DNA of 63,503 nucleotides, counting the filler, from Octopus bimaculoides (lineage: Eukaryota), in the NCBI RefSeq assembly GCF_001194135.2. It is 4 parts of 4 records of this genome, joined end to end, with 100 filler letters (N's around TTAATTAATTAA, not from the genome) between each part and the next. Parts side by side here need not be neighbours in the genome. Positions count along the whole stretch, not along the records: positions 31,397 to 53,419 come from NC_069010.1; 3 more parts are not named here. One strand, 5' to 3'. Positions 10,683 through 52,994 of this stretch are shown here, one piece after another. The position numbers and the translations under genes are program-made. Every line of letters starts with the position of its first letter. The stretch's first letter is position 1. The notes beneath the pieces are model-generated. The model was not told where the DNA came from and ran no database searches. It worked only from the letters and a program-made list of their open reading frames with translations.

Positions 10683-11559
10683 GTAATGAAGATACTGAAT
10701 TTTTGCAATTATTATCAGTAATTTGATTTATTGCCAGTGTATCTAATTAATAAGACAAGAAAAATATATACCCTCATTCAATTCTTGCTGTCAGCCTTTT
10801 GAGAAGGAATACAGTGTCTCTGTAGATATTCATCTTGGGTTGCTATCAAAGTCAGAGTTCATTCTGTCTATTAATTTGTGTAAAGCTGTTAAATATCACA
10901 AGATGGAATTATTTATAAACTTCATTCTTTGAGTTCTCTTATTAAGGAAGACAATAATTTTTTATTGAGCTTTAAAATATCTTGATACTGTTAAGTAATA
11001 ATTTAGTATGAAGCACTAAATATCGAAAATTTAAGGGGGAAAGAAATCACTCAGAGGAGAGAGACAGAGTAATATCTAATATATAATTAGTATTGTTGTT
11101 GTTGTTGTTTACATTCCACAGCAAGCTTCTGTCTAAACTAGGTCTCAACAAGAGCTTTACTTCACAAACTTTCTCAGAATATTATCAGCTCCCAAGAGTG
11201 TGATCTTTTGCACTGTTTGGCACAGTTTGCCTGGGAACTGCTCAAGGTGTCTGTTGAATTCTTTTTTGAATAAACCAAAAAAAAAAAGAAGAAAAAAAGT
11301 ACTATTTTTGTTTCAGTACCAGTATTTCGCAACAAGAAGATAGGAAGCATGAGGTGTTTTGGATTCGCAAAACAGCATACCAAAGTGGTTCAGCACATTT
11401 TAGGAGAAAAGGGTGTACTGAATGATAGTAATGCACTTACCCTTAGGGCTGTTGAGAAGAGGGAGAAACAAGTGAAGGTTTCTTCAAGAGGTTGCTGAAT
11501 GAAAATAATACATAGGAGAGAGACAAGCTACTCCAAGTAGACCCAACTGAGAGACCAGC

Positions 11560-31396: not shown

Positions 31397-32125
31397 TAGA
31401 AATATAATATTTCTAAATCTCTCAGAGAGATTTAAGCAGTAGTGGAAGGATAAAGTTGTAGTATATTGTCAACTTAATGTGACAATCCCAATAAAGGAAT
31501 ACACTACTGCCGTTTAGCCCTAGGAAGCTGGACCGCTTCCTGTCGGCCTTGACACACTTACTGTGTCCTTAAGTTTGCGAGGGGGAGACAAGCTCCTCCA
31601 CCCAGACTAGCCAGCATTCAGGGACATGTTTCTGAGTCTTTGCTACTTCAGGCTGATGACGAGCAAAGACTGTATCATTTTAGATACAGTGCAGACCACT
31701 GCAAGTGAGGGGGTATCCACTAACAGCTTTGCAGTGCGTTCAAAAATCACATACTGCTACTCTAATTCTCCATGAGAGGTTAGGGCCTGGAATGCTTCAA
31801 ATGGACGCATAACATATCGCTTAGCTGAATTAACCAATTATTTACTCCACAAATGGTTTATTATAAACGCTGTACTCTCCAGTATCATCTGTTTCAACAT
31901 AATTGTAATATATATAAACTGTGCTCTGTGACAAATTCTAAGAGATCTCACTATAGTTGTCTATCTCTTTCACTTTCTCATGGTAAACTTTCCAATACCC
32001 TATGAAAGTGTGTCGCTCACACCGTGTGTGTCAACGTGTTTGTCAATGTGTGTACGCATACTGTCTTAATGTATTTCATTAGGGGAAGGAATTATATAAA
32101 AGCACCACGTAAAATAATTGTTTTG

Positions 32126-32450
32126 AGGAGTGGCTGTGTGCTAAGTAACTTGCTTACCAACCACATGGTTCCGGGTTCAGTCCCACTGNNNNNNNNNNAT
32201 ATATATATATATATATATATAAGTCTATGTTTGTATGTCAGTGTTTGTCCACCAACATCGCTTGACAACCGATGGTAGTGTGTTTACATGCTCGTCACTT
32301 AGCGGTTCCGCAAGAGACACCGATGGAATAAGTACTAGGCTTACAAAGAATAAGTCCTGGGTCAATTTGCTTGACTAAAGGCAGTGCTCCAGCATAGCCG
32401 CAGTCAAATGACTGAAACAAATAGCAGAAAACTAAAAGAATAAAAGAATA
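32126..32450 (+). mobile_element. SINE family A spanning a small gap
   Basis: 5' part at 32126-32188 and 3' part at 32220-32450. Confidence 0.75.
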
Positions 32451-32705
32451 GCATAATTTAATGTTAATGCCTATGATTTTCCTTACATACACATAGACAC
32501 ATCAATATACACCAACATACACGCGCACAAAATGAAATACAAAGATATATATTTACATAAAATCATACTCTCATGCATAAATTGTCGGAAATAAGTTAAA
32601 GAGAGAGACACGCACACAAAGTTAGAGAGTAAATAAGAGAGAGAAAATAAATTGATTCCAGAAATATTACGTTAGTAACATATTATCAACAATAATTGAA
32701 CTTAC

Positions 32706-32777
32706 ACTATCTGTAAACTGGTAAGGTTGTGGAAAACTCCGCGGTCGATTTTGTCAATCATATTATTTCTGAAATGT
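32706..32777 (-). CDS. 72-nt LRR exon, (L)HFRNNMIDKIDRGVFHNLTSLQIV
   Basis: Exactly 72 nt between TTATGTTACAG| and |GTAAGT, phase 2/2, one 24-aa LRR. Joins in frame to the 43376 exon (TT+A = Leu). Not in the ORF track. Confidence 0.88.
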
Positions 32778-34060: not shown

Positions 34061-36467
34061 CACAGTATATTATTGGATGCAATAAGTTCCCTCGTGGAGA
34101 ATTCGGATGGTATTGAGAGACACTACATGTGGCAAAATACAGAAAACTCGCTCGTAATTGGTTCACGATGCAAAGAGTATTTAGAGGTAACGCCTTGCTT
34201 TCACAGTAGGCTTCAATATCATTGAGAGAGCTGGAAATCTATTTCAACAATATATACTGGACGTATATGTGAAGTTTGAGGTTTGCAGATTGCAATACCT
34301 TAGAGCAGTAAAGATGGATTTGTGGATTTGTGAAACTACCTGCTCAGAGGGGCTCTTGAGAATGTTGAGCCAGGAGTGCCTGTGATACTTCCATCATCAT
34401 TGACAGGCAGTCCTAGGAGTATGCACCATTTCCATGATGCAATGGTGATTGTAGAAAAGTATTGTAAACCTGACTTATTTGTCACATATACATGACACTC
34501 TTAGTTCTAAGAGACAGAAAATAATTTGCAGCGGAATGAGACTTCTGAAAACTCACCAGATTTAGTTGCAAGAATGTACAAGTTGCATCTCACTGAACTT
34601 CTGAAGGATATAAAGGACATACATGTATTTGTTGTATCAGTGGCTCACGTTCATGTCATTGAGTTTCAAAAGAAAGGACTTCCACACTGCCATATGCTGG
34701 CAGTCTTAAGAAATGAAAACAAGTTGAAGAACCGACATGATATAGATAAAATGGTATCAGCAGAGTTTCCTGATTCAAACAATGACCCAGTCATGCACGA
34801 TTTAGTTGAGAAACTCTTGATACATGGCATTTGTGATGAAGATAACCCCTCCTCACTCACCATGCATAGAGAATGCGTCTTGTCAAAAACATTTCCCAAG
34901 AAGTAGAGAAGTGAGACACTACTAAATATTAATGGATGTCCGGATACAGGAGGCGCAATAATGGGATCACAGCACAAGTTGGGCACCACTCGTCTGACAA
35001 CAGGTAAGTCATTCCATACCATGCTTATCTATAAAAGAAATTCCGAGCTCAGATTAATATAAAAGTTTGCTCCTCTGTAAAAAGCGATAAGGACATCTGC
35101 AAGTATTCTTGAAAGTTCCCGACTGCGCTTCATTTGAAGTAAGGAAGAATGCAGTGGCAGAAAGCAAATAGATTCAACAACCCCATAATGAAATCTGAAA
35201 TCATCTTGCATGTTGATATGTTTCACCTTTTGAACCCATGTAGAGAATATCTGAGTCCAAGTTGCATGACTACTTCCAGACTGTCTACAGACTAGCAGTT
35301 CACCTTGAAGAGACCAGTAGAGCATGTACTTCCACAGAGGTGAAGCTCAACAAGCTGCTCAAAAACAGAAAAGCGTGACACTCCTCTCACTGCATGGTTC
35401 AAATTGAATGAACACGATGAAAATTCACGGATGTACTTGTACCCTGACATTCCTGTACGTTACGTGCTTAATGAAAGTACAAAAAAATGGACACCTAGGA
35501 GAAGGAACATCATCATCAGCAGAAGAATGTACACAGTGAGTCCTAGGGACGTATAAAAACTTCTCTTACGATATTGCTGCTTTTGCATGTTCCAGTCGCT
35601 AAAAGCTTTGAAGAAGTTCGATCCGTAGGAGGTGAAATCAGTGCAACATTTAAAGATACGTGCATAAGACTTGGTCTTCTCCAAAATAATGAAGTGTTAG
35701 AGCATGCCATACTTGAAGCTGCTGCATATCGGCTGTCGTCTCAGCTGCGTATTATGTTTCCCGTCCTCTGCATCTCTTCAGACCCTACTAATGTTCTTCG
35801 CCTGCAGAACACCCATGATGATTATGTGATGGAAGATTATGTTCACTGAGGTCTGAATGCAAAACAAGCAGAAAATATGGCTCTACGCTCCATAAATGCT
35901 GTGTCATTTCAAAATGATACTAGCTGCCTTAATATTGGATTGCCTGAACTAGTGGCAATGCAACAAGTTGAGCATGATGACGTGAACCACATAGGCATTG
36001 TAACCCTTACTGATAAGCAGAGAGTGATTGCTGATGCAGTCATTGAATTAGTTGGAAAGAAAATGAGAGGTGAGGTGCCGGAATGTTCCTGTTTCTATGC
36101 AAACGCTCCCGGAGGCTGTGGAAAATCTTACATTTTTAATGTGCTGGTCTTACATCTGCGGAGAAACAACTATCAAGTGTGCTGTGGTGCGTGGACAAGC
36201 ACAGCTTCGACATTGCTGTCTGGAGGAAAAACGGTGCACAGTTTGCTCAAATTGCCCGTTACACTGTTGGAAACTAGCATTTGCAATGTACCACCCACCT
36301 CTGACCACAAACATAATTTGAGAAATTTGGATTTGGTTATTATAGGTGAGGCATCCATGATCCCTCTATTTGCTCTTCAAGCTATTGACAAAGCTCTGAA
36401 AGACATGACTGACAGCAATGAAGATTTTAGTGGAAAAGTTGTGCTCTTTGGGTGAGACTTCAGGCAA
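34061..36467 (+). mobile_element. Degenerate Helitron Rep-helicase (PIF1-like) coding region
   Basis: Rep motifs KYCKPDLFVTYT, VIEFQKKGLPHCH and ISAE-like VSAEFPD. Helicase motifs APGGCGKSY, ASTLLSGGKTVHSLLKLP, IIGEASM and FG*DFRQ. Multiple stops and frameshifts; termini not seen. Confidence 0.92.
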
Positions 36468-37435
36468 TTCTGTGCAAGATTCAAGTGAGTCAGGTCATAA
36501 TGTAGACGTGTCCTATGATTCATGATTTAATGGGTCGCTGGTAAATGATTCTTTGGCAATGCCTCTCAAGAACAGAGAATTAGTGTATCCTCTCACCAAA
36601 GAGCTCAGACTGCTTAATGATAAACTAAGAGGTTATGAATAAATTACCATGTGACCAGTCACTGGTCACCTCGTATAAGCCCTTCCACAAGACTTAACGT
36701 AGACCTTAAATATATCAATAAATACTCCTGTCATGAACCTATTGTATTTAAAAACTTAATTCCATAAATTAACCGCAGGATCCCTTGACTTTCTTCTTCG
36801 AAAGAAATATTCGAATACGCTGCCCCATATTGTAATAAGACCCTACATGATGGCAGCTTTACTGACAAAATCCACAACCAACCACCTCTTATCATCTAGA
36901 CTGAAGAACTGGTGTCGGAAAGTTTTATGGCTCCCCTCCCTTACATTCCACCCTTAATGTTAGGAGAAATGTAGGTACAAGCTTCTTGCACTTAGTAGAT
37001 ATCCACTTCCCAAGGTTTACGTCGTCCGTTATTTTTTTGATATGACTTAATATTTGGTAGACAAGAAAAGGTTATCTTGTCGGAATTTAAACATACCCAC
37101 CGGACATTTATTATACTAGTAATATCAGGTTTACATCTGCATGAGATTGAATTATTGTTACATCATTTTATATTCTTGTATTGGGGGTATATAATATAAC
37201 GAAACTGAGGGAAGGAAAGTAAACAGACGACGCACTACTGAGACTTCAGGCAATTCTGTGCAAGATTCAAGTGAGTCAGGTCATAATGTAGACGTGTCCT
37301 ATGATTCATGATTTAATGGGTTGCTGGTAAATGATTCTTTGGCAATGCCTCTCAAGAACAGAGAATTAGTGTATCCTTTCACCAAAGAGCTCAGACTGCT
37401 TAATGATAAACTAAGAGGTTATGAATAAATTACCA
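36453..37435 (+). repeat. 197-bp direct repeat: 36453-36649 and 37239-37435
   Basis: Direct reading of both copies; I see only 2 substitutions (gggtcg/gggttg and cctctc/cctttc). Confidence 0.93.
36672..37013 (+). mobile_element. Penelope-like element (Naiad-like) fragment, post-RT/thumb region
   Basis: Across frameshifts: YKPFHKT..LKYINKYSCHEPIVFKNLIP, LSSSKEIFEYAAPY, KVLW..NVGTSFLHLVDIHFP. These match the recalled PLE motifs YKPY..YIN..SNHP, LSSN..IF..AAP and NIG..FL.L.DKHFP. Confidence 0.7.
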
Positions 37436-39866
37436 GTCTTGAGAAACAATCTGCATGACCTAATTTCTTGGAGGGTATATACTTCAAATGGAAATCATAG
37501 TTTAATAATATCGAACCCCAGCGTTGCAATCTATTAGTAGTATGAATAGGGAATCCTTTTTTTGACCCAAATATTGATAATAATGGGTGATAATCAGTCT
37601 GTAGACGAAAACTTCTACCGTGCAAAAATCTGTGAAATTTTTTCACGGCAAAAATAATCGCTAGCGCTTCTTTTTCGATTTGACTATAATTTTTCTCTTC
37701 TGATATCAGAGAACGTGACGTATGAACCACCGTCTCCAAGTTAGTATCTTTATATTTATGTAGCATTAATGCTCCTATACCGTACTAAGAAGCGTCTGAA
37801 GCTACAACAATCTCCGCTGCAGGATCGAAGCATAATAACAACAAATCAGGTATAAATTAATTTTTTAAAATTTTGTCAAAAGCCTGTTAACATTTTTCCG
37901 ACAAATTCCATTTCATATCTTATTTTCAGCAGATTATTCCGTGGATCCCTTGCCTTATGCATATTTGGAATATAAATTTGGTAAAATTTGCCCACCCTAA
38001 AAATGCTTGTACGGTCGCTGTATTTGTCGGAGAGGGTATATTTTTAATTGCATCTGCCCTCGACGGGTCTGGTCGATGACCAACTTCTGTCAATGATTTG
38101 TACTTAATATCTTATTTTCGGTAAGAAAATTTCACACTTTTCGTCACTTAAATTAAGGCCGAAATCCCTATTTTTCCCGAATCCCTAGTTTACGTGTCCT
38201 GTGCGTTGTTCCCTGGATTTGCTCTTAACGAGAATATTATCCAGATATGGATTGTAAGACATCCGTTTAAACCAGTGAAAAATCAGCACACACTATGATC
38301 TTATTCTTTTTCTTAATGTACACAGTTAGTACTGCCTATTGACTATGTTCCACTTTTTGGGTAACTCCAATTTTTTTCTAATCTCTCTAACACTAAGTTT
38401 ATCTGTTATAACCTGTTTAGATACTGGTGTGGAGTGTTCTTTTATTTCAAACCAGGTCTTCGTTTTCGTACACAGACCTAATTTATCAGACAGAACTTCA
38501 AAAAATACTTTTTTTTTTTTCAATTCGTCTGTCGCATTATTTGTACTGGCGAAAAAACCATTCACATCTTTAAAAAGATTTATGGAATATCCCATAAGTT
38601 AAATAATTGCATCGAGTCAGTTACGAATAAGTTTGCTTTTGTATTATTTAACACAAAACTCTAGGTTTTAAGGTTTTTTTAACGAAATGTAATTTTACTT
38701 ATCAATTGGCTCTTAAAATATTTTTTGCTGGTACACGATGGGCAATTTTCGAAGTTAAATTTAATTTAGGTTTCTCGATTTTTTTCCATGTAACTCTGTT
38801 AATTATTGATAAGTCGCTTCCTGTAACTTTACGTTTGTGTTTTAAATGCTTCATACACAAATTCTCTTTGAGGCTCGTTTGTATTTTTTGTCACCGATAA
38901 TCCGATTAGGCGATTTTTTTCTTTTGAACCACTTTTTAGGTTCTGCTTTGCAGTGTAATTTTTTATGACCTATATTACCAAACTTGAAACATTTTATATT
39001 ATCAGACGGAAAATTATTTTTAGAATGTAGACCACTGCAACCATCACATGGATTCAGTCTTGATGTTATCTTCTTATCTGATACCGGTTGACACACTTGA
39101 ATTTGAGAGCAAACGTTCTCTTCAATTTTATTTGCGTCATGATTTATAACCCTCTGACATTCTGCTACTGCTGTAGTCGCTGTTATTGTTGCTGCTGCTG
39201 TAGTCGATGTTGTAACTGCTGTAGCTGCTGCTGTTGTTGCTGTTATTGTTGCTGCTGCTGATTTTGCAACTGTATCACGGAGGCCAACAGGTCTTCCATG
39301 TTAATGAATTTTTCTTTGATTTCGTACCAAAAAAGAAAATTTTAAATGTCCAACGTAAGCTTCGAACAACTCGTCGTCACTTTTATATACTTGTATTAGA
39401 TATCTGATATTACGAAGCAGCGGTGAAGAAAGTATATACTAGACGTACTATTATTACTACTACACTTGAGTCAACGCTCTCAATCTCGACTCACTGGGAA
39501 CTACTTACCAACACGAACTGTTAATCGTTCACAGTTCTCTAATTTATAATAACGAGTCAGCCGACCTTTGGTCACTTGGGGGGAGGAGTCGGGATCCTTC
39601 CACAACACGTTGATTGTCTCTCTTGTATTTTCTTGCCTTCTTCACAAGCATCCCTTGCTCAAAGTTTATTTGTTCAAAAGGTAACCCAGAAACTCAGTCT
39701 TGCTTTCAGCTTGATAAATGGCGGAATAAATTATTTCAACCAGGAAACCCTTAGAAACTGTATTTACAAACTTTGTGTATTTTTATTTTAAGATTGCCTT
39801 TACTCTCTTAACTGATTGAGGGTTTTCTTCTTTGTGTAGGATTACCACATAATATGTATGTACACA
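37436..39866 (-). mobile_element. Truncated Gypsy/Ty3 LTR retrotransposon (Mag/K02A2.6-like): putative 5' LTR, gag, partial RT, RNase H; integrase missing
   Basis: Gag start MEDLLASVIQLQNQQQ, degenerate zinc knuckles (CDGCSGLH, CFKFGNIGH), TVYIKKKNKIIVCADFSTGLN, YLDNIL, RPDPSRADAIK, VASDAS, NYSQIEKEALAIIFAVKKFH..TDYHPL..HADCFSRL. PBS-like TGACGACGAG at 39379-39370. RT core deleted between GLNGCL and YLDNIL. LTR limits (about 39392-39866) are uncertain. Confidence 0.9.
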
Positions 39867-41599: not shown

Positions 41600-41800
41600 A
41601 GATTTTTATTTGAATTGTCCCAAATAATGAAGGAGTCATCGAGAAAGCGTTTCCACATTTTTTGTTAGTTGTTTTTAGTCCTTTTCTCCTCATTCTTGAT
41701 GCATTAAACCTCAGTCCGTTCCCATTATTAACGACTTGTCCTTCATCCCATAAACAGCAGCTCTCTTCATCATTCTTGTAAAGGTTGACCTGCAACTACT
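41600..41800 (-). mobile_element. Penelope-like RT catalytic-motif fragment
   Basis: KMWKRFLDDSFIIWDNS resembles the PLE W.RYxDD.F.IW motif; an LFMG-like stretch lies upstream. Confidence 0.55.
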
Positions 41801-43375
41801 TAAGAGGAATGTTAATGATATCTATCTCACCAGCATTGGAGAGGCTGAAGGAGTTATAAGACCTGACTGATCCTCTCTCCAAAACCGAAACAAAAAGAGT
41901 GAGAACTCAACTCACATCACAAACAACTGGACGATATACTGCAAGGTGTCTGAATCGACATCCTTAAAGTTGCGCTAATTCTTTGCTCTGTTATGGTTCT
42001 TTATTGATCTCGGAAATGAATGACATGAGGTTGACCTCGGCCGGATTTCAAGTTAGAAATTCTGTGTGTCAGAAAAAATACTGCAACGCATTCTACTGCA
42101 ATGTATTGCAATTTCAGTCAATTCGCGGTTATATTATGAATGATGAAAATATCTAACTTATTAAATGGAACATCGACTTTACTATTTAACATCTTGAGAT
42201 ATACGTGATTTCTCAATTGGTCAAAACGTTCCAAATCTGTTAAGAAATAGATCTGATCCGCATTAGTATTGGAATATTTGATTAAAACTGAAAGTTTAAG
42301 GTGACTAAACTATTTAATTTGAAATAATCACCTGGAACACAGTTTATTCATGATTGTCATCAGCAAGTATTAAATAATTACTGAATTTTATTCTATTCCA
42401 TGACTTAAGTCTTTAAATGTTAATAAAGCACTAAAAAAGTACAATAAAACATGTAAAAATTACAAAATTTTCAGGGCAACTGAGAGACATCAATCAGCCG
42501 AAACTTCAATTAAGCTTGCATAATTTTGTAATAATTGTGTAATAAGTTTTATTGTGTTCATGATAGGGTAAATTTTACTGATGATATTCTGTCAAAAGTA
42601 AATTCCTCATAATTTGTTCAAACAGCACTATTTTGATTTCATCACTTAGGTATTTTAAGAATTTAGCAATTTAAACGGATCTTGTCATTATCTGCAATTT
42701 AATCCGTCTGTATCATTTTAAATTGTAAAAACAATCATTTTTTCTATAGAAACAAACCTGAAATTTTGGAAAAGGGACAAGTCCTTTATATTGATCTCAG
42801 AGCTAAATTGGTATTTATTTTATCGAACCCGAAAGAATGAAAAGCAAAGTCAACCTCCACAGAATTTAAAATCGAAACGTAAACACGGATGAAATACCGA
42901 TTAACATTTTGTCCGGCGTGCCCAAAGATCCTGCTAGTTCACTGCATTTTTAATTGTAAAATTAATACAAACAATATTTAAAATCTATTCTGTGACACTG
43001 TAAAAATAAACAACAATTCAACTAATTAATGAAATCATATAATTCTGCGAAATACACATGTTTTGTTAGCACCTACGTTTTTATACTGCCCGTTCATTGA
43101 ATATACCGTAAGATCAGATGAAGTTAGACAAATAACATCAAACTTCAGATGTTAACCATATCCAATCATTGTGTATGCGATGTTATGCATTATAAGCTCA
43201 ATATAAGAGAAACAGTTTATTTGACTTCACATTAAGTAACATATCAATCTGTTTTACATAATATTATGTTTTTAATGCTGTGAGATCAACAACAGAATCG
43301 GTTGGCTGAGAACATAATCAATGAGAAATTAAAATATTGGATGTGGAGAATACGTAGAAAGTATCAAATACTTAC

Positions 43376-43563
43376 AAATATTTAACATTCATCGGAATTG
43401 GTTGTGGGACTGATGATAGTTGGTGATTTTCACAATTTACATTTACAGGTGATTTGCAAGTGCATATCTTGCATATTTCTGAAACAGCATGAGCCTCCAA
43501 AACCAATATCAAACACAGTATCAACGCAAATATTTGTATATATGATACTATGTGTTGAGACAT
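43376..43563 (-). CDS. First coding exon of an extracellular LRR protein: signal peptide + cysteine LRRNT cap
   Basis: Translates MSQHIVSYIQIFALILCLILVLEAHAVSEICKICTCKSPVNVNCENHQLSSVPQPIPMNVKY(L): hydrophobic signal-like stretch, then CxxCxC-x6-C and LxxVPxxIP, typical of LRRNT. Phase-2 donor TT|GTAAGT at 43375. Acceptor TTTTACAG ends at 43584, so the exon spans 43583-43376 with 20 nt before the ATG. Confidence 0.85.
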
Positions 43564-44149
43564 ATTTTCAGATGTAGATTTATCTGTAAAACAAGAAAAT
43601 AGAAAATATCAGAGACTTCAATGTTTTTAGTTTTACACTGCAGAATCTTCGAAGGAACTAAAATTAGCCCCTGTTCCATATAACAAATATGTATTGTTTT
43701 CATAATTTGATATTCAAAGTAACAAAATTAAATTTTGATAAATTACTCTGAAGAAACTTATTAAAGACTAGCTAGGAGTGGCTGTGTGGTAAGTAGCTTG
43801 CTTACCAACCACATGGTCCCNNNNNNNNNNNNNNNNNNNNNNNNNNNNNNNNNNNNNNNNNNNNNNNNNNNNNNNNNNNNNNNNNNNNNNNNNNNNNNNN
43901 NNNNNNNNNNNNNNNNNNNNTGTGTGTGTGTCTTTGTGTATATGTTTATCCTCAAACATCGCTTTAGTTCAGGTGATATTGCTTCCGCACTCGTAACTGG
44001 ACGATTAGGCAAAAAGACTAAGAAAATAAGTAGATAACTAAAATATAGCAGTGGGGGCGATTTGTTCGACTAAACGTCTGTAAATTGGTGTGCCATTAAG
44101 GCCGCATTCTAATGTGTGAAATAAGTTAGTTTGGATATGTTCATATTGC

Positions 44150-44744
44150 GACCAAGTCTGTGACTTGTGCAGATGTGGATGATCCCATCGCGGTTCTGAT
44201 TTATTCCATAATTTACCATCAATGTCTACTACAAATATTATGCCGATTTCGTGTCGGAACATATCTAAGTGTTTCATACCATAAATCACTGCTTTATTGA
44301 GGACGATCGGGTTAATAGTGTAGTAGTATTTCTCTATATCTAGTTGAGAGAATTTACTATCTTTGTTAATTTGTAGATGCTTAAGCTATCGAATTACTTC
44401 TTGAGTATCTGATCAGGGCGCTAATTTAATTTTGGATTCAGGGCAGGCGGATTTTCTTACTAATCATTCCTGTATCTGATTTAGATGGACATATCAGTGC
44501 AAATTAGGGATCAAATGGAATTTAAGTTTATGGACTTTAGGCATAATTCAGGATTTTCTAGGGACGTAAGGCTCAGTTCTATCATCTATATCTAAATCTC
44601 AGGCGAGTTCTTATTTTGTATTTGTAATCCTTGCTAACATGTCGTTATTGACGTGCCTATATTTACTGAGCAGTTCCTTCCTAATCATATATTTATATAA
44701 CACAATATTAACGGTGTAAATGCTACATAAGTTTGTTCACTGGG
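44150..44744 (-). mobile_element. Penelope-like (Naiad-like) RT fragment, left arm of an inverted duplication
   Basis: PSKSDTGMISKK, KFSQLDIE and AMGSSTSAQVTDLV. It is the reverse complement of 47877-48748. Confidence 0.8.
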
Positions 44745-45479
44745 NNNNNNNNNNNNNNNNNNNNNNNNNNNNNNNNNNNNNNNNNNNNNNNNNNNNNNNN
44801 NNNNNNNNNNNNNNNNNNNNNNNNNNNNNNNNNNNNNNNNNNNNNNNNNNNNNNNNNNNNNNNNNNNNNNNNNNNNNNNNNNNNNNNNNNNNNNNNNNNN
44901 NNNNNNNNNNNNNNNNNNNNNNNNNNNNNNNNNNNNNNNNNNNNNNNNNNNNNNNNNNNNNNNNNNNNNNNNNNNNNNNNNNNNNNNNNNNNNNNNNNNN
45001 NNNNNNNNNNNNNNNNNNNNNNNNNNNNNNNNNNNNNNNNNNNNNNNNNNNNNNNNNNNNNNNNNNNNNNNNNNNNNNNNNNNNNNNNNNNNNNNNNNNN
45101 NNNNNNNNNNNNNNNNNNNNNNNNNNNNNNNNNNNNNNNNNNNNNNNNNNNNNNNNNNNNNNNNNNNNNNNNNNNNNNNNNNNNNNNNNNNNNNNNNNNN
45201 NNNNNNNNNNNNNNNNNNNNNNNNNNNNNNNNNNNNNNNNNNNNNNNNNNNNNNNNNNNNNNNNNNNNNNNNNNNNNNNNNNNNNNNNNNNNNNNNNNNN
45301 NNNNNNNNNNNNNNNNNNNNNNNNNNNNNNNNNNNNNNNNNNNNNNNNNNNNNNNNNNNNNNNNNNNNNNNNNNNNNNNNNNNNNNNNNNNNNNNNNNNN
45401 NNNNNNNNNNNNNNNNNNNNNNNNNNNNNNNNNNNNNNNNNNNNNNNNNNNNNNNNNNNNNNNNNNNNNNNNNNNNNNN

Positions 45480-45536
<57 letters not shown>

Positions 45537-45815
45537 CTTTCTAATTTATATTCTGTCTTTATATTTTCTTTTGTGTATGTATGAAGATGTGTACGAGTGC
45601 ATGTGTCTGTGTGCTGATAAGCAAATGTTTTATGCATGAGAATGAACATGTGCATCAGAGTGAACATATGAACATGTATGTTTGTATCTGTGTCCGTGGG
45701 GCGTGCCTTCATGTCNNNNNNNNNNNNNNNNNNNNNNNNNNNNNNNNNNNNNNNNNNNNNNNNNNNNNNNNNNNNNNNNNNNNNNNNNNNNNNNNNNNNN
45801 NNNNNNNNNNNNNNN

Positions 45816-45992
45816 ATTACCGCAATGAGTATATGGGAAGTAACGGTGGTCAGATATAGTGCATCTATCCTCAAATGGACTAAGGAGGAAATATAAACAC
45901 TTGATAAAAAGACGAAAAAGTTGATGACGCTGCATGAGGCTCTACACCCAAACGCAAACGTAAACAGGCTGTATATGAAAAGAAAGGAATAG
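45816..45992 (+). mobile_element. R4/Dong-like (restriction-like endonuclease non-LTR) RT C-terminal fragment
   Basis: AMSIWEVTVVRYSASILKWTKEEI*TLDKKTKKLMTLHEALHPNANVNRLYMKRK matches the recalled R4/Dong motif AINTWA..RYS.GI..WT..EL..LDRKTRKLMT....LHPK.DV.RLY..RK. Confidence 0.75.
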
Positions 45993-46545
45993 GTCTCCCA
46001 TAAATACTAATAAAAACTTATGATTTTCTACGTGAAGCAACCCTCAAAGTATGTCACTCACACTTTGTCTTTACGTGTGTATATGTATAAGAGTAAGGTA
46101 TTTCATTGGGGTGACAGAATGACTGAAAACAGTATGAAGCAAATTTTTAGTGGCTTCATTTTCTGTGAGTAAATATGATTTTTTTACACACGCAGATATA
46201 CACACAGACACGGAGGCACGCCCCTCGGTCACAGATACAAACATATATGTTCATATGTTCACTCTGATGCACATGTTCATTCCCATGCATAAAAAATTTA
46301 CTTATCAGCACACAGACACATGCACTCGTACACATCTTCATATATATACAAAAGAAAATATAACGACAGAATATAAATTAGAAAGGGAGCGAGAGAGAGA
46401 GATAGGGAGAGAGAGAGATAGAGAGAGACAGACAGACAGAGAGACAGAGAGACAGAGATAGGGAGAGAGATAATAAGAAAGAAAAGGCTTGAAATTTCTA
46501 GTGATTTTACGTTACAAGAATAATATAAACAAAAATTGAACTTAC

Positions 46546-46617
46546 AATTTCTGTAAATTGTAAAGATTTTGGAAGATTCCACGTTCGATTTTGTCGATCT
46601 TATTATACTCCAAAGTT
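46546..46617 (-). CDS. 72-nt LRR exon, TLEYNKIDKIERGIFQNLYNLQKL
   Basis: TTATGTATACAG| acceptor, TT|GTAAGT donor, 72 nt, phase 2/2. It is the C-terminal end of track ORF 46542..46799. Confidence 0.88.
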
Positions 46618-47574
46618 CTGTATACATAAAGCAAATTTGAAAGGAAATAGCATAGAAAAGTTTTCTGATAAAACATTAAATTTGTAGTCTTAAAATCAGA
46701 TGAGAAAGGAGGGCTATGAAAGAAAAATGCGTGATGGTGATAATGAGGAGGGGAATACAGAAGACAGGAGGGAGCAGGTAGAGAAAAGGGGCGATACACA
46801 ATGAAAGACTGAGCGGAATAATGAAGGTAATGAAAGAAAATAATTCATACATCGTATAGATCTATAAAAGTGCAAGTAGAAGACGATGGACCAAATATGA
46901 CATATGAGAAATGAAAAAAAAGCAGTTGAAAAATTTGAAAGAACAGAAATTGATGAACATGAACCATGTAGAGGAAAATTGTGAACACGAATCAAACACA
47001 TATTAGAAGCACGATGTGGAAAATAACGAAAATCCGAAAGAGGGAGGAGAAAATATCTTTGAATATAAATAGTACAGTCACACATACCCTTATATGCACA
47101 TACATACAATTTCGTCCAGGATATCAATCCTTGATGTAGATACACTCACACATACTTTCGAAGATATACATCCAAACACTCTCAAATACATTCACACAAA
47201 AAATGAGTGAGACAAAATGAATTAGAGAAGAATCGAGTGGGACGAAAAGCCATATGTGAAAGCAATAAGTATTTAGAATTATCCTCGGACGATATTGCTG
47301 ATACTATAATGGTGAAGACGCCTGTGGCATGAAAGAGTTTTGATACGCAATTCTATTTCAGAGAAATATCATAGATTGTTAATATTGAGTCTTAAATTAG
47401 GGAAAAGAAGAATGAAGACGATGGAGAAAACGAGAATGAAGATAACGATTACAATTACGAAGAATGAGATACCGAATGATAAGAAGCACAGGGAGTAGAA
47501 GAAGAAGAAGAAGAAGAAGAAGAAGAAGAAGAAGAAGAAGAAGAAGAAGAAGAAGAAAGCAAGGAAGGAAGAAG

Positions 47575-48748
47575 GGCTAAACCCAGTAAGAAGCATTATA
47601 TAAGCCAACCAATTCATACAAAGAATGCAGTGGAAAGCTTTCTTCTTTGACAAAAATGATATCACATGGCAAACCTGAACATGGAGATCTACTAAGAAAA
47701 GTTATTAAATCAAGAAAAAACCAAACGACCAACCATCACCTAACCAGATTTTTAGAAGAATTATATAGTACAGTTAAGAAAGTGAAGTTCTGTAAATACC
47801 ATAGAAGTTACAAAAAGTTTTAGCAAATTATCAAAAAATTACTTGATGACATCGCGAAAAGTCCAGGAACCATTGTCCCAGTGAACAAAACTATGTAGCA
47901 TTCACACTGTTGATATTGCGTTATATAAATATATGATTAGGAAGGAACTGCTCAGTAAATATAGACACGTGAATAATGACACGTTAGCCAGGATTAAAAA
48001 TACAGGATAAGAACTCGCCTGAGATTTAGCTATAGATGATAGAACTGAGTCTTACGTCCCGAGAAAATCCTGAATTATGCCTAAAGTCCAGAAACCTAAA
48101 ATCCATTTGACCCCCAAGTTGCATTGATTTGTCCATCTAAATCAGATACAAGAATGATTAGTAAGAAAATCCTTGATAGAGTACCGCCTGCCCTGAATCC
48201 AAAATTAAATTAGCGCCCTGATCAGATACTCAATAAGTAATTCGATAGCTTAAGCATCTACAAAATAACAAAGATAGTAAATTCTCTCAACTAGATATAG
48301 AGAATCACTACTACACTATTAACCCGATCGTCCTCAATAAAGCACTGATTTATAGTGTGAAACACTCAGATATGTTCCGACTTTTCGCGATATTTAAGGC
48401 GGCGAGCTGGCAGAAACGTTAGCACGCCGGGCGAAATGCTTAGCGGTATTTCGTCTGCCGCTACGTTCTAAGTTCAAATTCCACCGAGGTCGATTTTGCC
48501 TTTCATCCTTTCGGGGTCGATTAAATAAGTACCAGTTACGCACTGGGGTCGATATAATCGACTTAATCCATTTGTCTGTCCTTGTTTGTCCCCTCTGTAT
48601 ATTGCCCCTTGTAGGTAGTAAAGAAATAACACTCAGATATGTTCCGACACAAAATAGGCATAATATTTGCGGTAGACATTGATTGTAAATTATGGAATAA
48701 ATCAGAACCGCGATGGGATCATCCGCATCTGCACAAGTCACAGATTTG
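47575..48748 (+). mobile_element. Penelope-like (Naiad-like) RT fragment interrupted by a SINE, right arm of the inverted duplication
   Basis: FIQRMQWKAFFFD, VKKVKFCKY, IVPVNKT, LAIDDRTE, PSKSDT.MISKKILDR, KFSQLDIENHYYTI..LNKAL and MGSSASAQVTDL, with stops and frameshifts. Confidence 0.82.
48398..48627 (+). mobile_element. tRNA-derived SINE with a Nin/Deu-type central domain (family B); 21-bp target-site duplication
   Basis: GGCGAGCTGGCAGAA (A-box-like), GTTCAAATTCC (B-box-like), GCCTTTCATCCTTTCGGGGTCGATTAAATAAGTACCAG core. AACACTCAGATATGTTCCGAC is duplicated at 48361-48381 and 48628-48648. Confidence 0.88.
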
Positions 48749-49740
48749 NNNNNNNNNNNNNNNNNNNNNNNNNNNNNNNNNNNNNNNNNNNNNNNNNNNN
48801 NNNNNNNNNNNNNNNNNNNNNNNNNNNNNNNNNNNNNNNNNNNNNNNNNNNNNNNNNNNNNNNNNNNNNNNNNNNNNNNNNNNNNNNNNNNNNNNNNNNN
48901 NNNNNNNNNNNNNNNNNNNNNNNNNNNNNNNNNNNNNNNNNNNNNNNNNNNNNNNNNNNNNNNNNNNNNNNNNNNNNNNNNNNNNNNNNNNNNNNNNNNN
49001 NNNNNNNNNNNNNNNNNNNNNNNNNNNNNNNNNNNNNNNNNNNNNNNNNNNNNNNNNNNNNNNNNNNNNNNNNNNNNNNNNNNNNNNNNNNNNNNNNNNN
49101 NNNNNNNNNNNNNNNNNNNNNNNNNNNNNNNNNNNNNNNNNNNNNNNNNNNNNNNNNNNNNNNNNNNNNNNNNNNNNNNNNNNNNNNNNNNNNNNNNNNN
49201 NNNNNNNNNNNNNNNNNNNNNNNNNNNNNNNNNNNNNNNNNNNNNNNNNNNNNNNNNNNNNNNNNNNNNNNNNNNNNNNNNNNNNNNNNNNNNNNNNNNN
49301 NNNNNNNNNNNNNNNNNNNNNNNNNNNNNNNNNNNNNNNNNNNNNNNNNNNNNNNNNNNNNNNNNNNNNNNNNNNNNNNNNNNNNNNNNNNNNNNNNNNN
49401 NNNNNNNNNNNNNNNNNNNNNNNNNNNNNNNNNNNNNNNNNNNNNNNNNNNNNNNNNNNNNNNNNNNNNNNNNNNNNNNNNNNNNNNNNNNNNNNNNNNN
49501 NNNNNNNNNNNNNNNNNNNNNNNNNNNNNNNNNNNNNNNNNNNNNNNNNNNNNNNNNNNNNNNNNNNNNNNNNNNNNNNNNNNNNNNNNNNNNNNNNNNN
49601 NNNNNNNNNNNNNNNNNNNNNNNNNNNNNNNNNNNNNNNNNNNNNNNNNNNNNNNNNNNNNNNNNNNNNNNNNNNNNNNNNNNNNNNNNNNNNNNNNNNN
49701 NNNNNNNNNNNNNNNNNNNNNNNNNNNNNNNNNNNNNNNN

Positions 49741-49773
<33 letters not shown>

Positions 49774-50335
49774 CACTTACAATACGAAAGTTCTCTTTGG
49801 GTTTCCGTCTACGAAACCCACTCGCATAGAATTAATCAGTTCGAGGTTACAGCAGGAGTCACACGCAAATATATCAAATAATGCCACAAAAACGTGAACC
49901 ATGAGTTTGATAAGAATCTTCTTGCTGCACAACGAGTGTTTGTGTTTGTGTATGCGTGTGTATGTGTATATATGTGAATATATATATATTGTGTGTGTGT
50001 GCATATAAGTATATATACATATATACATACACATATATATATGTATATATAAATATATATATGTATACATATATATGCCAATATCTATGACTTTTCTTAC
50101 ACACAGATAGACACGCCAACGTTCACAAACATATACGTACAAACAAAGAAATACAACGATATATATTCGCATAGAATCATAGTCTTATACACAAAATATC
50201 AAAAGTAAGTTAGAGAAAAAGGGAGGGAGAGAAAGAGAGAAATAGTCAGACAGACAGTGAGGGTGAGAAAAGGAAGATATATAATTTCTAGAGATATTAC
50301 GTCAATGACATATCGTAAACAGAAATTGAACTTAC

Positions 50336-50407
50336 AATAATTGTAAATTGGTAAGTCCGTGGAAGGTACCGCGATCGATATTCTCGATCGTATTATTCTT
50401 CAAATAT
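50336..50407 (-). CDS. 72-nt LRR exon, YLKNNTIENIDRGTFHGLTNLQLL
   Basis: TTTTATGTTACAG| acceptor, TT|GTAAGT donor, 72 nt, phase 2/2, canonical LRR consensus. Not in the ORF track. Confidence 0.88.
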
Positions 50408-51107
50408 CTGTAACATAAAATAATGTATAAAGGAAAGAGTGAACGAAAGTTTTCAGATTAAATATTCAATTTTTAGTCTTAAAATCAGATGAATAACATA
50501 GAAAAATGACAAAGAAAAGCCTAATGATGATAATGATGATGATGATAAAAGATGCGCTACAGAAGTGAAAATGATGTTAATATCGAGAACCTGAAGGAAA
50601 ATCAACCACAGAACGTATAGCTTTATGAAAATGAAAGTTGATGAAAAGTTTCCAATGCACCAGAAATAGAATAAGTATCTGAGACAATATTTTACAAAGA
50701 GGAAATATATGAAGAACATTACCAGTGTAAGCGAAAGAAGAAGTAGTAGTAGTAGTAGTAGTAGTAGAAAAGAAGAGAAGGAGTAGAAGAAGAAGAAGAA
50801 GAAGAAGAAGAAGAAGAAGAAGAAGAAGAAAAGGAAGATGAAGTAGAAGGAAGAAGAAGAAGAAGAAGACGGAGGAGGAAGCGGAGGAGGAGGAGGAGGC
50901 AGAGATGGCGAAGACAAACAACACGAAAATGGAAATAAAGAAGACGAAAACGGATAATAAATAGTCGCACATATACAGTAGCGATATGGGGGACAGAATA
51001 TGAGTTAGAGTGATAAAAACAACGTAGGAAATAAAATGGAATGGACACTAAGATTTATGTAAAAATTGCATTCATAGATATTTTTCAAGAAAAGTGAAGG
51101 AGCTTAC

Positions 51108-51179
51108 AATATCTCTAGTCTTGGAAGACCCTGGAAGGTTCCTTGTTCAATACTCGAAATATTATTTCTGTAAGCATAC
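51108..51179 (-). CDS. 72-nt LRR exon, YAYRNNISSIEQGTFQGLPRLEIL
   Basis: TTTTTTACTGCTTCAG| acceptor, TT|GTAAGC donor, 72 nt, phase 2/2. Ala replaces a normally conserved Leu. Confidence 0.82.
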
Positions 51180-51876
51180 CTGAAGCAGTAAAAAACGATA
51201 GAAATTTTAATGGAGATTATTTGTGATGAAATATTGTATGAGTGTCTTGAATAAAACAAACGATGACAACATAGATTATAATATACAAGAAGGATAGGAC
51301 AAAAAAGACGAAAAACAAGAAGTAAAACAATACCAANNNNNNNNNNNNNNNNNNNNNNNNNNNNNNNNNNNNNNNNNNNNNNNNNNNNNNNNNNNNNNNN
51401 NNNNNNNNNNNNNNNNNNNNNNNNNNNNNNNNNNNNNNNNNNNNNNNNNNNNNNNNNNNNNNNNNNNNNNNNNNNNNNNNNNNNNNNNNNNNNNNNNNNN
51501 NNNNNNNNNNNNNNNNNNNNNNNNNNNNNNNNNNNNNNNNNNNNNNNNNNNNNNNNNNNNNNNNNNNNNNNNNNNNNNNNNNNNNNNNNNNNNNNNNNNN
51601 NNNNNNNNNNNNNNNNNNNNNNNNNNNNNNNNNNNNNNNNNNNNNNNNNNNNNNNNNNNNNNNNNNNNNNNNNNNNNNNNNNNNNNNNNNNNNNNNNNNN
51701 NNNNNNNNNNNNNNNNNNNNNNNNNNNNNNNNNNNNNNNNNNNNNNNNNNNNNNNNNNNNNNNNNNNNNNNNNNNNNNNNNNNNNNNNNNNNNNNNNNNN
51801 NNNNNNNNNNNNNNNNNNNNNNNNNNNNNNNNNNNNNNNNNNNNNNNNNNNNNNNNNNNNNNNNNNNNNNNNNNNN

Positions 51877-51919
<43 letters not shown>

Positions 51920-52922
51920 CAAAGAAACAGAAGCAACAGATGAGAAAAGCAGAAGATAAAGATGTGGGAATGGAAAGAGGAAAAGGAAAAAAGAACAAGA
52001 AGAAAACGACGAAGACTAAGAACAAGGACAAGAGGGAGAAGACGAAGAAGAAAAAGAAAAGGAGAAAACATGGAGAAGACATGCTTAAAAGATGATAGGA
52101 TGAAGCAGAGAATGTAGCAAAAGAGAAAACAACAAATAATTCGGAGATTAAGAACAGACTTTGGAAGAAGATAAGTTGGGAAAGAAAAACTCAGTTGCTT
52201 GCTGTCAGATACACACATATGCACATACAGGTTTTCACATACATTCATTCACGGATACACTTGTGCATAAAATATGATATGTTGTGTAGTCATACCCACG
52301 GTTACACTAACACACATTGAAATGCACTCCTCGCAAATGTGATGAGAGAGAATATTAGTCGAAAAGAAGAGAAAGGAAAGAACATGGGAAAACATCACAA
52401 ATTTATAAATAAACCATCGGTGAAAAAATATCTGGGCAATTGATGTACATTATAAGTGCTGGCAGTTTGTATTGTTTACAGAGAGAAAGTAACATTTGAT
52501 TATTTTCTAAGAGTTAATATTCTTAAATTGTCCATCAACAAGTTGCTGTTTCAGAAAAATAACCTGAAGTGAATGAAGTCGGAGATGAATAGAAGAAATC
52601 AGTGAGAAAACTGAACAGAACAAGCCGTAAAAATAGAAGACAAAACATATGAATACAAATTGTTTGGTCACATATACATTTAGACTCTCACATATACATG
52701 AACATGCACAGATGCATTTCCATTAATAAGTTTTAACGCAAACATATATATTATCCCAGTAGTACTCGACTTCAGAATCAGTCAAACAGATATGATGTCA
52801 ATATGGGGATAGAATAGGAGGTACAGGGATAAAAAGAGTGAGGGGAAGAGAAATGAGAGGACAAGAAGGTTATGTAAAAATAACCTTCATAATGCATTAT
52901 CTTCGAAAGTGAACGAACTTAC

Positions 52923-52994
52923 AATAACTGTAAATTATTGAGACCTTGGAAGCTTCCTTCTTCAATACTCAAAATATTATTTCCGGTTAAATAT
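52923..52994 (-). CDS. 72-nt LRR exon, YLTGNNILSIEEGSFQGLNNLQLL
   Basis: TTCTTTATTGCTACAG| acceptor, TT|GTAAGT donor, 72 nt, phase 2/2, canonical LRR consensus. Confidence 0.88.

What the first reader, a model, noticed from the sequence alone, without database searches (positions are those of the whole stretch)
43376..52994. Four intact LRR exons sit upstream of the signal-peptide exon with no visible 3' end of their own
Seen: minus-strand order is LRR(52994), LRR(51179), LRR(50407), LRR(46617), signal/LRRNT(43583), LRR(32777). Between 46546 and 43583 the sequence is only repeats and short gaps, leaving little room for C-terminal exons. Splicing any upstream LRR exon (ending TT) to the 43583 acceptor gives TT+A then TAA, an immediate stop, 20 nt before the next ATG. 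Inference, three options: (a) a truncated tandem paralog; (b) spare LRR cassettes next to an expressed gene, loosely like the lamprey VLR layout, though these keep splice sites and VLR cassettes do not; (c) contig mis-ordering.
Basis: partly seen in the sequence, partly recalled or inferred. Interest (0 to 1): 0.7.

Follow-up and report, generated by a model that had tools for sequence, protein, structure and literature searches.

The report
Octopus receptor LRR exons, gappy scaffold
The exons are real: they are ordinary spliced leucine-rich-repeat exons of an octopus-specific adhesion-receptor gene family, and their odd place upstream of a signal-peptide exon rests only on two gaps of unknown length in a draft assembly, not on any lamprey-like cassette system.

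Summary
On the minus strand there are five LRR exons of exactly 72 nt. Each has an acag acceptor, a gtaag donor and phase-2 borders on both sides. Four lie upstream and one downstream of an intact signal-peptide/LRRNT exon (43583-43376). No other coding exon is detectable anywhere in the piece.

The locus belongs to a family found in Octopus sinensis and O. vulgaris. Its layout is SP-LRRNT, an array of one-LRR exons, LRRCT, a Cys-rich module, GPS and 7TM ('ADGRG6-like', 'slit-like'). In O. sinensis the predicted isoforms differ by multiples of 24 aa, through use or skipping of these exons. So 'spare cassettes' here are cis-spliced cassette exons, not VLR-type donors.

The family's 3' exons span more than 13 kb in a gap-free O. 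sinensis contig, so they cannot hide in the 3 kb interval. That interval holds two 100-N gaps. Between them lies a 1.8 kb block that is an inverted 91-96% copy of the flanks of exon 46617. Homology to O. sinensis stops about 180 nt upstream of the acceptor, at a repeat that runs into the gap. Four O. sinensis loci show no LRR exon upstream of the SP exon.

Most likely (about 0.55) sequence is missing or misplaced at those joins. A real truncated or fused paralog (about 0.3) stays open. The VLR-like reading is about 0.01.

The parts
52923..52994 (-). LRR exon, 72 nt, phase 2-2: (L)YLTGNNILSIEEGSFQGLNNLQL(L)
   Evidence: The exon with about 350 nt of flank is 73% identical to the 51179 unit. It is 68-76% identical to the 'NNISTIKEG'-type units of O. 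sinensis L001.
51108..51179 (-). LRR exon, 72 nt, phase 2-2: (L)YAYRNNISSIEQGTFQGLPRLEI(L)
50336..50407 (-). LRR exon, 72 nt, phase 2-2: (L)YLKNNTIENIDRGTFHGLTNLQL(L)
   Evidence: The exon with flanks is 72% identical to the 32777 unit over 464 nt and to the 46617 unit over 340 nt.
46546..46617 (-). LRR exon, 72 nt, phase 2-2: (L)TLEYNKIDKIERGIFQNLYNLQK(L)
43376..43583 (-). Signal-peptide + LRRNT exon. ATG at 43563. Acceptor ag at 43585-43584. Donor gt at 43375-43374. It is exon 2 in relatives.
   Evidence: sequence. It is 52-67% aa identical to P0001 and to O. sinensis / O. vulgaris family proteins. Gene models P0010, P0011 and P0080 splice an upstream exon into this acceptor in phase 1.
43584..43765 (-). 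3' end of the intron before the SP exon, 83-85% identical to O. sinensis paralogs. Homology ends at 43765.
41661..43375 (-). First about 1.7 kb of the intron after the SP exon, colinear with O. sinensis L001 and L002. The whole 41661-43765 alignment is 77% identical over 2.2 kb.
32706..32777 (-). LRR exon, 72 nt, first LRR exon after the SP exon on the same gap-free stretch: (L)HFRNNMIDKIDRGVFHNLTSLQI(V)
   Evidence: There is no N between 32199 and 43820.
43776..43820 (+). Head of a SINE-like dispersed repeat that runs into the 100-N gap. The same head lies at 32127-32188, before the 10-N gap.
43821..43920 (.). 100-N gap; its size is treated here as unknown. It is the first of the two joins that link the SP-exon contig to the LRR block.
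   Evidence: Flank analysis.
43921..44744 (+). Small contig. 43921-44140 is a microsatellite plus repeat. 44153-44744 is an inverted copy (91-96%) of 47877-48748.
44745..45479 (.). 735-N gap. By offset from the arms, an inverted copy of exon 46617 would lie at about 45306-45377 on the + strand. This is inferred and unread.
   Evidence: arithmetic on the arm coordinates.
45480..45715 (+). 236-nt contig, in its whole length an inverted copy (92%) of 46207-46443, the intron just 3' of exon 46617.
45716..45815 (.). Second 100-N gap; its size is treated here as unknown.
46207..48748 (-). Unit around exon 46617. Its two ends are the partners of the inverted copy.
34526..38093 (.). Transposon debris inside the 10.6 kb intron between the SP exon and exon 32777. 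Helitron Rep/PIF1 fragments lie on + (34526-36455). An LTR-retrotransposon RNase H fragment lies on - (37419-37766).

Best explanation
Shown:
- The six exons are genuine, selectively maintained exons of the octopus-specific family of LRR-bearing adhesion-type receptors.
- Family layout, from relatives: exon 1; SP-LRRNT exon; a tandem array of one-LRR, 72-nt, phase-2 exons; LRRCT; a Cys-rich module; GPS; 7TM.
- The array grows by tandem duplication of exon-plus-intron units.
- Every border has the same phase, so any subset of exons splices in frame. Predicted O. sinensis isoforms differ in exactly that way.

Inferred:
- The four upstream exons are the LRR array of the preceding unit of a head-to-tail cluster, or displaced exons of the same gene.
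- Their missing 3' end, like the missing exon 1 and upstream region of the SP-exon gene, is most likely a limit of the draft scaffold.
- The only links between the LRR block and the SP-exon contig are two 100-N joins around a small, suspiciously inverted near-copy block.
- So tens of kilobases may be missing there, or pieces may be misplaced.
For: - Exon anatomy and the chance control.
- Family identity. An exhaustive profile search found O. sinensis and O. vulgaris proteins with the same SP/LRRNT. Their domains are LRR_8, LRRNT, GPS and a weak HRM, and a neighbouring 1088-aa gene has LRR + GPS + 7tm_2. The window is 77% identical to O. sinensis loci over 2.2 kb, intron included.
- Gene structure in the gap-free contig L001. 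The SP exon is followed by 12 LRR exons of 72 nt, phase 2. Eleven have canonical splice sites; the twelfth, near 11126, is seen only by tblastn. The LRRCT and later exons are spread from 38982 to beyond 51805. A 3' end therefore needs more than 13 kb, not 3 kb.
- Cassette use. Isoform lengths are 337/361/385/409 and 477/501/525 aa, and the exon-by-exon map shows whole exons used or skipped.
- Purifying selection. The units are about 28% diverged from each other, yet all keep an open frame, splice sites and the LRR scaffold. Simulated neutral decay leaves about 5% of exons intact at 15% substitutions.
- Assembly doubts. There are two 100-N gaps and an inverted 91-96% copy between them. Homology with relatives stops at a repeat at the contig end, whereas L001 and L002 stay 93% alike for 1.2 kb upstream. 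That extra kilobase, and an exon 1 like that of L002, match nothing in the piece. Four of four O. sinensis loci have no LRR exon within 7-10 kb upstream of the SP exon, and all 17 of their LRR exons are on the gene's strand.
- Ritschard et al. 2019 (PMC6408891) describe a co-localised, octopus-specific adhesion-GPCR expansion in which some members carry LRRs.
Against: - The flanks of gap 43821-43920 look like two parts of one repeat layout that is also seen at the 10-N gap 32189-32198. That argues the first join, and the orientation of the inverted block, may be correct.
- All exon-bearing contigs have the same orientation, as expected for a true neighbourhood.
- No read data, second assembly of the same species, or transcript could be consulted, so nothing shows directly that sequence is missing.
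- The species of the window was not identified beyond 'Octopus or a close relative'.
- The 3' part of the window's own gene lies outside the piece, so its GPS/7TM end is inferred from relatives.
Confidence: 0.55

Rival explanations
1. The arrangement is real. A deletion or fold-back rearrangement inside a tandem cluster joined the LRR array of an upstream paralog to a point about 200 nt upstream of the next gene's SP exon. It removed the first gene's 3' exons and the second gene's exon 1 and promoter.

Two outcomes are possible. One is a recently truncated paralog. The other is a fused transcription unit in which 46617 splices in frame to 32777 and the SP exon is skipped or serves as an internal alternative start.
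For: - Phase compatibility of all borders.
- Homology to relatives ends abruptly about 180 nt upstream of the acceptor, and no exon 1 is found.
- An inverted duplication with a short spacer next to the breakpoint is a known signature of replication-based rearrangement (established knowledge; arms).
- The gap flanks are compatible with continuity.
- Unequal crossing-over between LRR-exon arrays of different genes is proposed for Tetrahymena LRR genes (PMC6564038).
Against: - The arrangement is absent from 4 of 4 O. sinensis loci.
- The SP exon has a strong acceptor and donor. It would probably be included, and that gives TTA TAA, so a fused unit would tend to make nonsense transcripts.
- A dead remnant would have to be very young to keep four exons intact.
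- The adjacency rests on 100-N joins.
Confidence: 0.3
2. The four exons belong to the same gene as the SP exon and should lie downstream of it, after or around exon 32777. The scaffolder put that block on the wrong side. This is the reader's option (c), and its weight is already counted inside the best explanation.
For: - Exons 50407 and 46617 are as close to 32777 (72% with flanks) as they are to each other.
- In relatives the array follows the SP exon directly.
- The joins are 100-N gaps.
Against: - The SP exon and 32777 lie on one gap-free stretch, so at least that link is right.
- The block is at least 7.6 kb long and continues past the piece's edge.
- Nothing is known about what follows 31397.
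Confidence: 0.15
3. The upstream exons are donor cassettes that are copied somatically into the expressed gene, as in lamprey VLR loci.
For: Only the loose picture: intact LRR units lie beside an SP/LRRNT exon, and one unit may be inverted.
Against: - The splice sites are canonical and the phase is uniform.
- The SP exon has a normal donor and a normal next exon.
- Relatives make their variety by splicing.
- No incomplete germline gene is seen.
Confidence: 0.01

Closest known systems
Octopus-specific adhesion-GPCR expansion ('group 3' of Ritschard et al. 2019, PMC6408891). In O. sinensis / O. vulgaris it is annotated as ADGRG6-like, slit homolog-like, LRRC15-like or chondroadherin-like.
   Same: - Homologous SP/LRRNT exon: 52-67% aa, and 77% nt over 2.2 kb including intron.
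- The same 72-nt phase-2 LRR exons.
- The same conserved acceptor before the ATG.
- Genes are tandemly clustered.
   Different: - The window's LRR exons are a more diverged subtype (I-D/E-K/N-I-D/E-R-G instead of ISRIEKEMF).
- Here LRR exons lie upstream of the SP exon, which none of four O. sinensis loci shows.
- The 3' half of the window's gene is outside the piece.
Genes built from one-LRR, phase-2 exons: brown-algal ROCO genes (72 bp, phase 2, alternatively spliced; PMC11378527), gonadotropin receptors (all introns phase 2, as cited there), and Tetrahymena 90-bp LRR exon arrays (PMC6564038).
   Same: - One repeat per exon.
- Identical phase at every border, with a split junction codon.
- Arrays grow by tandem exon duplication.
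- In-frame skipping gives isoforms.
   Different: These are unrelated proteins in unrelated lineages. This is a likeness of gene architecture, not of descent.
Vertebrate LRR-bearing adhesion GPCRs ADGRA2/ADGRA3 (GPR124/GPR125).
   Same: N-terminal LRRs with caps on a GPS + 7TM body (from established knowledge, and as noted in PMC6408891).
   Different: The octopus proteins carry a Cys-rich module after LRRCT. By eye it ends in a CCxxxLCN motif that resembles Ly6/uPAR, but Pfam does not confirm this. They do not carry the Ig domain. No orthology was tested.
Lamprey and hagfish VLR loci.
   Same: LRR units lie next to an SP/LRRNT-coding segment.
   Different: VLR cassettes lack splice sites and are copied into an incomplete germline gene. 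Here all units are normal exons, and the SP exon is spliced to a normal LRR exon.

Membership tests
Octopus LRR adhesion-GPCR family (O. sinensis / O. vulgaris relatives) | Homologous signal-peptide + LRRNT exon | tested here: met
   52-67% aa identity to P0001, P0010, P0011, P0025, P0080, P0143 and P0125. Nucleotide identity is 79-80% in the exon and 83-85% in the 182 nt before it.
Octopus LRR adhesion-GPCR family (O. sinensis / O. vulgaris relatives) | Array of 72-nt, phase-2, one-LRR exons after the SP exon | tested here: met
   Exon 32777 follows the SP exon on the same gap-free stretch. The exon size, phase and splice context match those in L001-L004.
Octopus LRR adhesion-GPCR family (O. 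sinensis / O. vulgaris relatives) | SP exon is exon 2: a conserved acceptor just 5' of the ATG is used by an upstream exon in phase 1 | tested here: inconclusive
   The acceptor sequence is conserved. It is used in models P0010, P0011 and P0080, with exon 1 found in L002. No exon 1 was found in the window.
Octopus LRR adhesion-GPCR family (O. sinensis / O. vulgaris relatives) | LRRCT, Cys-rich module, GPS and 7TM downstream | not testable with these tools
   None of these is in the piece. The gene runs off the piece at 31397.
VLR-type somatic cassette system | Donor cassettes without splice signals | tested here: not met
   All five LRR units have an (a/t)cag acceptor and a gtaag donor.
VLR-type somatic cassette system | Incomplete germline gene: SP/LRRNT separated from LRRCT by non-coding DNA, with no LRR exons of its own | tested here: not met
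   The SP exon has a normal donor. It is followed by a normal LRR exon, in phase, as in relatives.
VLR-type somatic cassette system | Somatic DNA differs from germline DNA | not testable with these tools
   There is no read data.
Decayed pseudo-exons of a dead paralog | Stops, frameshifts or lost splice sites | tested here: not met
   None in any of the four upstream exons. Neutral decay would leave about 5% of exons intact at 15% substitutions.

The most novel reading that the evidence does not exclude
The scaffold is right, and the locus is a fused two-unit gene. An internal SP/LRRNT exon then acts as a second start, so one receptor body can carry either of two different LRR N-termini.

Together with the family-wide mix-and-match use of 72-nt LRR exons (13 predicted isoforms from one O. 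sinensis gene, plus intact exons used by none), this would be a splicing-based system for diversifying the ectodomains of octopus adhesion receptors. It would be comparable in spirit to Dscam or clustered protocadherins.
Probability: 0.12. Interest if true: 0.6.

Novelty: new member of a known kind. Interest (0 to 1): 0.3.

Why it matters
As it stands this is a diverged, unannotated member of a known octopus gene expansion, sitting in a poorly assembled stretch. The striking 'exons before the signal peptide' layout should not be read as a new immune-type cassette system.

What is worth keeping is the family picture. The receptor ectodomains are built from interchangeable, same-phase LRR exons. 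These exons duplicate in tandem and evolve fast: exon identity is no higher than that of the flanking introns, and dN/dS is about 2 in the SP/LRRNT exon, on small counts. They are used combinatorially in predicted isoforms.

If transcript data confirm this, it bears on how octopuses diversify cell-surface receptors that are expressed in suckers, skin and nerve cord.

Tried and rejected
- Two word-indexed protein searches gave almost nothing. The SP exon + 32777 found one hit, P0001. The four upstream exons joined together found none. A third search, with a profile of SP exons, added only two short models. The family was found only by the exhaustive profile search.
- An exact look-up of the 63-aa SP ORF, of P0001, and of ten window ORFs found nothing on record. 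No second copy of this locus could therefore be fetched, and the species stays unidentified.
- P0010, P0025 and P0080 are not on record as gene products, and the gene of P0125 spans 229 kb, so no DNA was returned.
- A PDB sequence search gave only generic extracellular LRR proteins (IGFALS, LRRC15, LGR4/5, TLR3, VLR) and does not assign a family.
- I looked for hidden C-terminal exons by Pfam on frames with X at stops and by tblastn. None was found.
- I looked for an exon 1 like that of L002, and for the 1 kb of upstream homology. Neither has a match.
- I tried to use the SINE-like repeat at the gap edges as a continuity test. It was inconclusive, because the two halves differ in apparent age (93% against about 65%) and too few intact copies were on hand. 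ARAGORN sees no tRNA in it.
- I considered that the strongly conserved 182 nt before the acceptor marks a constrained element, and rejected this. Its identity (83-85%) equals the synonymous-site level (dS 0.10-0.14).
- I considered that the inverted block is just two transposon copies, and rejected this as the sole cause. Only about 170 nt (48393-48563) is a dispersed repeat, and the arms are colinear over four segments.

Full report
**What is in the sequence.** The piece (31397-53419) has 36% G+C and 2,477 N. The N lie in six runs: 10 N at 32189, 100 N at 43821, 735 N at 44745, 100 N at 45716, 992 N at 48749 and 540 N at 51337.

A motif scan and a look at the bases confirm five LRR exons on the minus strand, at 52994-52923, 51179-51108, 50407-50336, 46617-46546 and 32777-32706.
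- Each is exactly 72 nt, with a pyrimidine tract and (a/t)cag before it and gtaag after it.
- Each consists of one base, 23 codons and two bases, so both borders are phase 2 and the junction codon is Leu (Val after 32777).
- A scan for 'AG, 72 nt open in that frame with the LRR scaffold, GT' finds these five and nothing else. The mean in 200 shuffles is 0.01.

The signal-peptide/LRRNT exon runs from 43583 to 43376.
- Its ATG is at 43563.
- It has a hydrophobic core, AHA|VS, and a CKICTC...C cap, and it ends TT|gtaagt.

**No hidden 3' end.**
- The three minus frames of 43564-46560 and of 31397-32720 give no Pfam domain. Only low-complexity hits on (GA)n appear.
- tblastn with eight family proteins hits the six exons only.
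- The 10.6 kb intron between the SP exon and 32777 holds Helitron and LTR-retrotransposon fragments.

**Which family.** The word-indexed searches were nearly blind here. An exhaustive profile search with the SP exon and its one hit (P0001) brought up proteins that match from the signal peptide onwards.

These come from Octopus sinensis and O. vulgaris. They are named ADGRG6-like, slit homolog-like, LRRC15-like and chondroadherin-like.

Their layout is SP-LRRNT, a variable number of 24-residue LRRs, an LRRCT-like cap and a Cys-rich module, followed in the longest models by a weak HRM match or a GPS motif and transmembrane helices. A neighbouring 1088-aa O. sinensis gene has LRR_8, GPS and 7tm_2.

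Ritschard et al. 2019 (PMC6408891) describe an octopus-specific expansion of adhesion GPCRs. Its members are co-localised in the genome, 5 of 22 carry LRRs, there are signs of positive selection, and expression is in the axial nerve cord, suckers and skin. The window fits that group.

At the DNA level, window 41661-43765 is colinear with two O. sinensis loci at 77% over 2.2 kb, intron included. The source is therefore an Octopus or a close relative. The species was not identified.

**How the family's genes are built.** The gap-free O. sinensis contig L001 (52.7 kb) shows this order:
- the SP exon at 7064-7255;
- 12 LRR exons of 72 nt, same phase and same splice context, between 11126 and 31738 (11 have canonical splice sites; the one near 11126 is seen only by tblastn);
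- an LRRCT exon at 38982-39140;
- Cys-rich exons at 43815-43907 and 45865-46050;
- further exons up to the contig end.

A 3' end of this family therefore needs more than 13 kb. It cannot sit in the 3 kb between 46546 and 43583, even allowing for 935 N.

Whole exon-plus-intron units of 2-3.7 kb are 79-85% alike within these arrays, measured between the arrays of L002 and L001. The arrays therefore grow by tandem duplication.

Predicted isoforms of one gene are 337, 361, 385 and 409 aa long. Those of another are 477, 501 and 525 aa. Mapped on L001, the 13 isoforms differ in which LRR exons they include, mostly among the 5'-proximal ones. Two intact exons (28668, 31667) appear in none of them. 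These are computed gene models, and I could not check their transcript support.

The same kind of architecture is described in two other systems:
- brown-algal ROCO genes, with 72-bp phase-2 LRR exons that are alternatively spliced (PMC11378527);
- Tetrahymena LRR genes, with 90-bp phase-2 exons (PMC6564038).

**The SP exon is exon 2 in relatives.**
- Models P0010, P0011 and P0080 read x|KSTPGNM across the acceptor, each with a different first base. An upstream exon is therefore spliced in, in phase 1.
- In L002 that exon (ATG CTA ATG ... CTG A|gtaagt) lies 4.2 kb upstream of the SP exon.
- The acceptor is conserved in the window.
- No counterpart of exon 1 is found in the piece.

**Are the upstream exons alive?**
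- The units 50407, 46617 and 32777 are 72% identical to each other in the exon and 70-80% in 100 nt of flanking intron. The units 52994 and 51179 form a second pair.
- Despite about 28% divergence, every exon keeps its frame, both splice sites and the L..L.L..N.I..I....F..L scaffold.
- In a substitution-only simulation, only about 5% of exons survive 15% change with all of these intact.
- The exons have therefore been under purifying selection for most of their history. Either they are in use, or they lost their context very recently.

**The interval between 46546 and 43583.** It is not featureless.
- 44153-44744 and 45480-45715 are inverted copies (91-96%) of 47877-48748 and 46207-46443, the two flanks of exon 46617. 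They keep the same relative order.
- By offset, a copy of the exon would lie at about 45306-45377 on the + strand, inside the 735-N gap.
- This 1.8 kb block is bounded by the two 100-N gaps. I treat their size as unknown, because 100 N is the usual placeholder for a gap of unknown size. That is my knowledge of the convention and was not tested here.
- None of the 17 LRR exons in four O. sinensis loci is inverted.

**Continuity across the gaps.**
- Homology with O. sinensis stops at 43765. From 43776 the head of a SINE-like repeat runs into the gap.
- After the gap come a (TG)n run and about 200 nt that are homologous to the sequence following the same repeat head and a 10-N gap at 32189.
- That layout is compatible with one repeat element spanning the gap, and so with a correct join.
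- However, the heads of the two copies are 93% alike and the right-hand parts only about 65%. The only intact copy available (L002) lacks the right-hand part. The test is inconclusive.
- L001 and L002 remain 93% alike for 1.2 kb upstream of the SP exon. That extra kilobase has no match anywhere in the piece.
- So either the upstream region of the window's gene has been replaced, or it lies in unread or misplaced sequence.

**Weighing the readings.**

For an assembly cause:
- the only links are two 100-N joins in a tandemly repeated family;
- a small inverted near-copy sits between them;
- both the 3' end of one unit and the 5' end of the next are missing;
- the layout is absent from 4 of 4 gap-free O. 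sinensis loci;
- the exons are intact.

For a real rearrangement:
- the repeat layout across the first gap;
- the common orientation of all contigs;
- the abrupt end of homology;
- the fact that an inverted duplication beside a breakpoint is a known rearrangement signature.

I put about 0.55 on missing or misplaced sequence. Within that, about 0.15 is for the four exons belonging downstream in the same gene. I put about 0.3 on a real truncated or fused paralog.

In the fused case, 46617 can splice in frame to 32777, so the upstream exons would use the downstream 3' end. The SP exon has strong splice sites, though. If included, it would give an immediate stop.

The VLR-like reading has nothing in its favour beyond the picture, and I put it at about 0.01.

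**Verdict.** The locus is a new, diverged member of a known octopus receptor expansion that shows a known kind of LRR-exon architecture. The unusual layout cannot be trusted until the two joins are spanned.

Noticed in passing
L001 (O. sinensis VCDQ01004985.1) 11126-31738: Thirteen predicted isoforms of one gene differ in which 72-nt LRR exons they include, mostly among the 5'-proximal ones. Two intact exons (28668-28739, 31667-31738) are in none of them. This looks like combinatorial cassette use, but it rests on computed gene models.
   Followed up: partly
window 43376-43563 vs L001 7064-7255 and L002 10001-10192: The SP/LRRNT exon has dN/dS of about 2.0-2.7 against O. sinensis paralogs (nd about 33, sd about 4-5; not significant on these counts). 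The non-coding 182 nt before it is as conserved as synonymous sites.
   Followed up: partly
window LRR exons with 100-nt flanks (52994, 51179, 50407, 46617, 32777): Exon identity between paralogous units (72%) is no higher than the identity of their flanking introns (70-80%). Amino-acid identity is only about 50%, with changes at non-scaffold positions. This fits fast or diversifying change in the exons.
   Followed up: partly
O. sinensis, gene of P0125 (no DNA returned): One gene model spans 229 kb and overlaps, on the opposite strand, a 1088-aa gene with LRR + GPS + 7tm_2. The annotation pipeline seems to stitch exons across several cluster members.
   Followed up: no
window 36453-36649 and 37239-37435: A 197-nt direct repeat at 99% identity, 589 nt apart. 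It lies between the Helitron PIF1 fragment and the LTR-retrotransposon RNase H fragment. It could be a nested insertion boundary or a local assembly duplication.
   Followed up: no
window 32127-32188, 43776-43820, 49771-49960; L002 4104-4255: A SINE-like dispersed repeat with a B-box-like GGTTCAGTCCCAC sits at or next to three of the six N gaps (32189, 43821, 48749), each time beside a (TA)n or (TG)n run. At these three gaps the assembly breaks at the repeat's microsatellites.
   Followed up: partly
P0001 (UniParc UPI0006956807) vs window 43564-43590: This 116-aa model starts FTDKST, which is colinear with the window across the acceptor into the intron, and it has Ile where the others have the start Met. 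It looks like an ab initio model that read through the splice site of a paralog.
   Followed up: partly
L002 5797-5837: Exon 1 of one O. sinensis paralog carries an in-frame ATG (MLMPGKKEGIL). This would add 17 residues before the signal-peptide Met. No similar exon is found upstream in L001, L003 or L004, so first exons differ between paralogs.
   Followed up: partly
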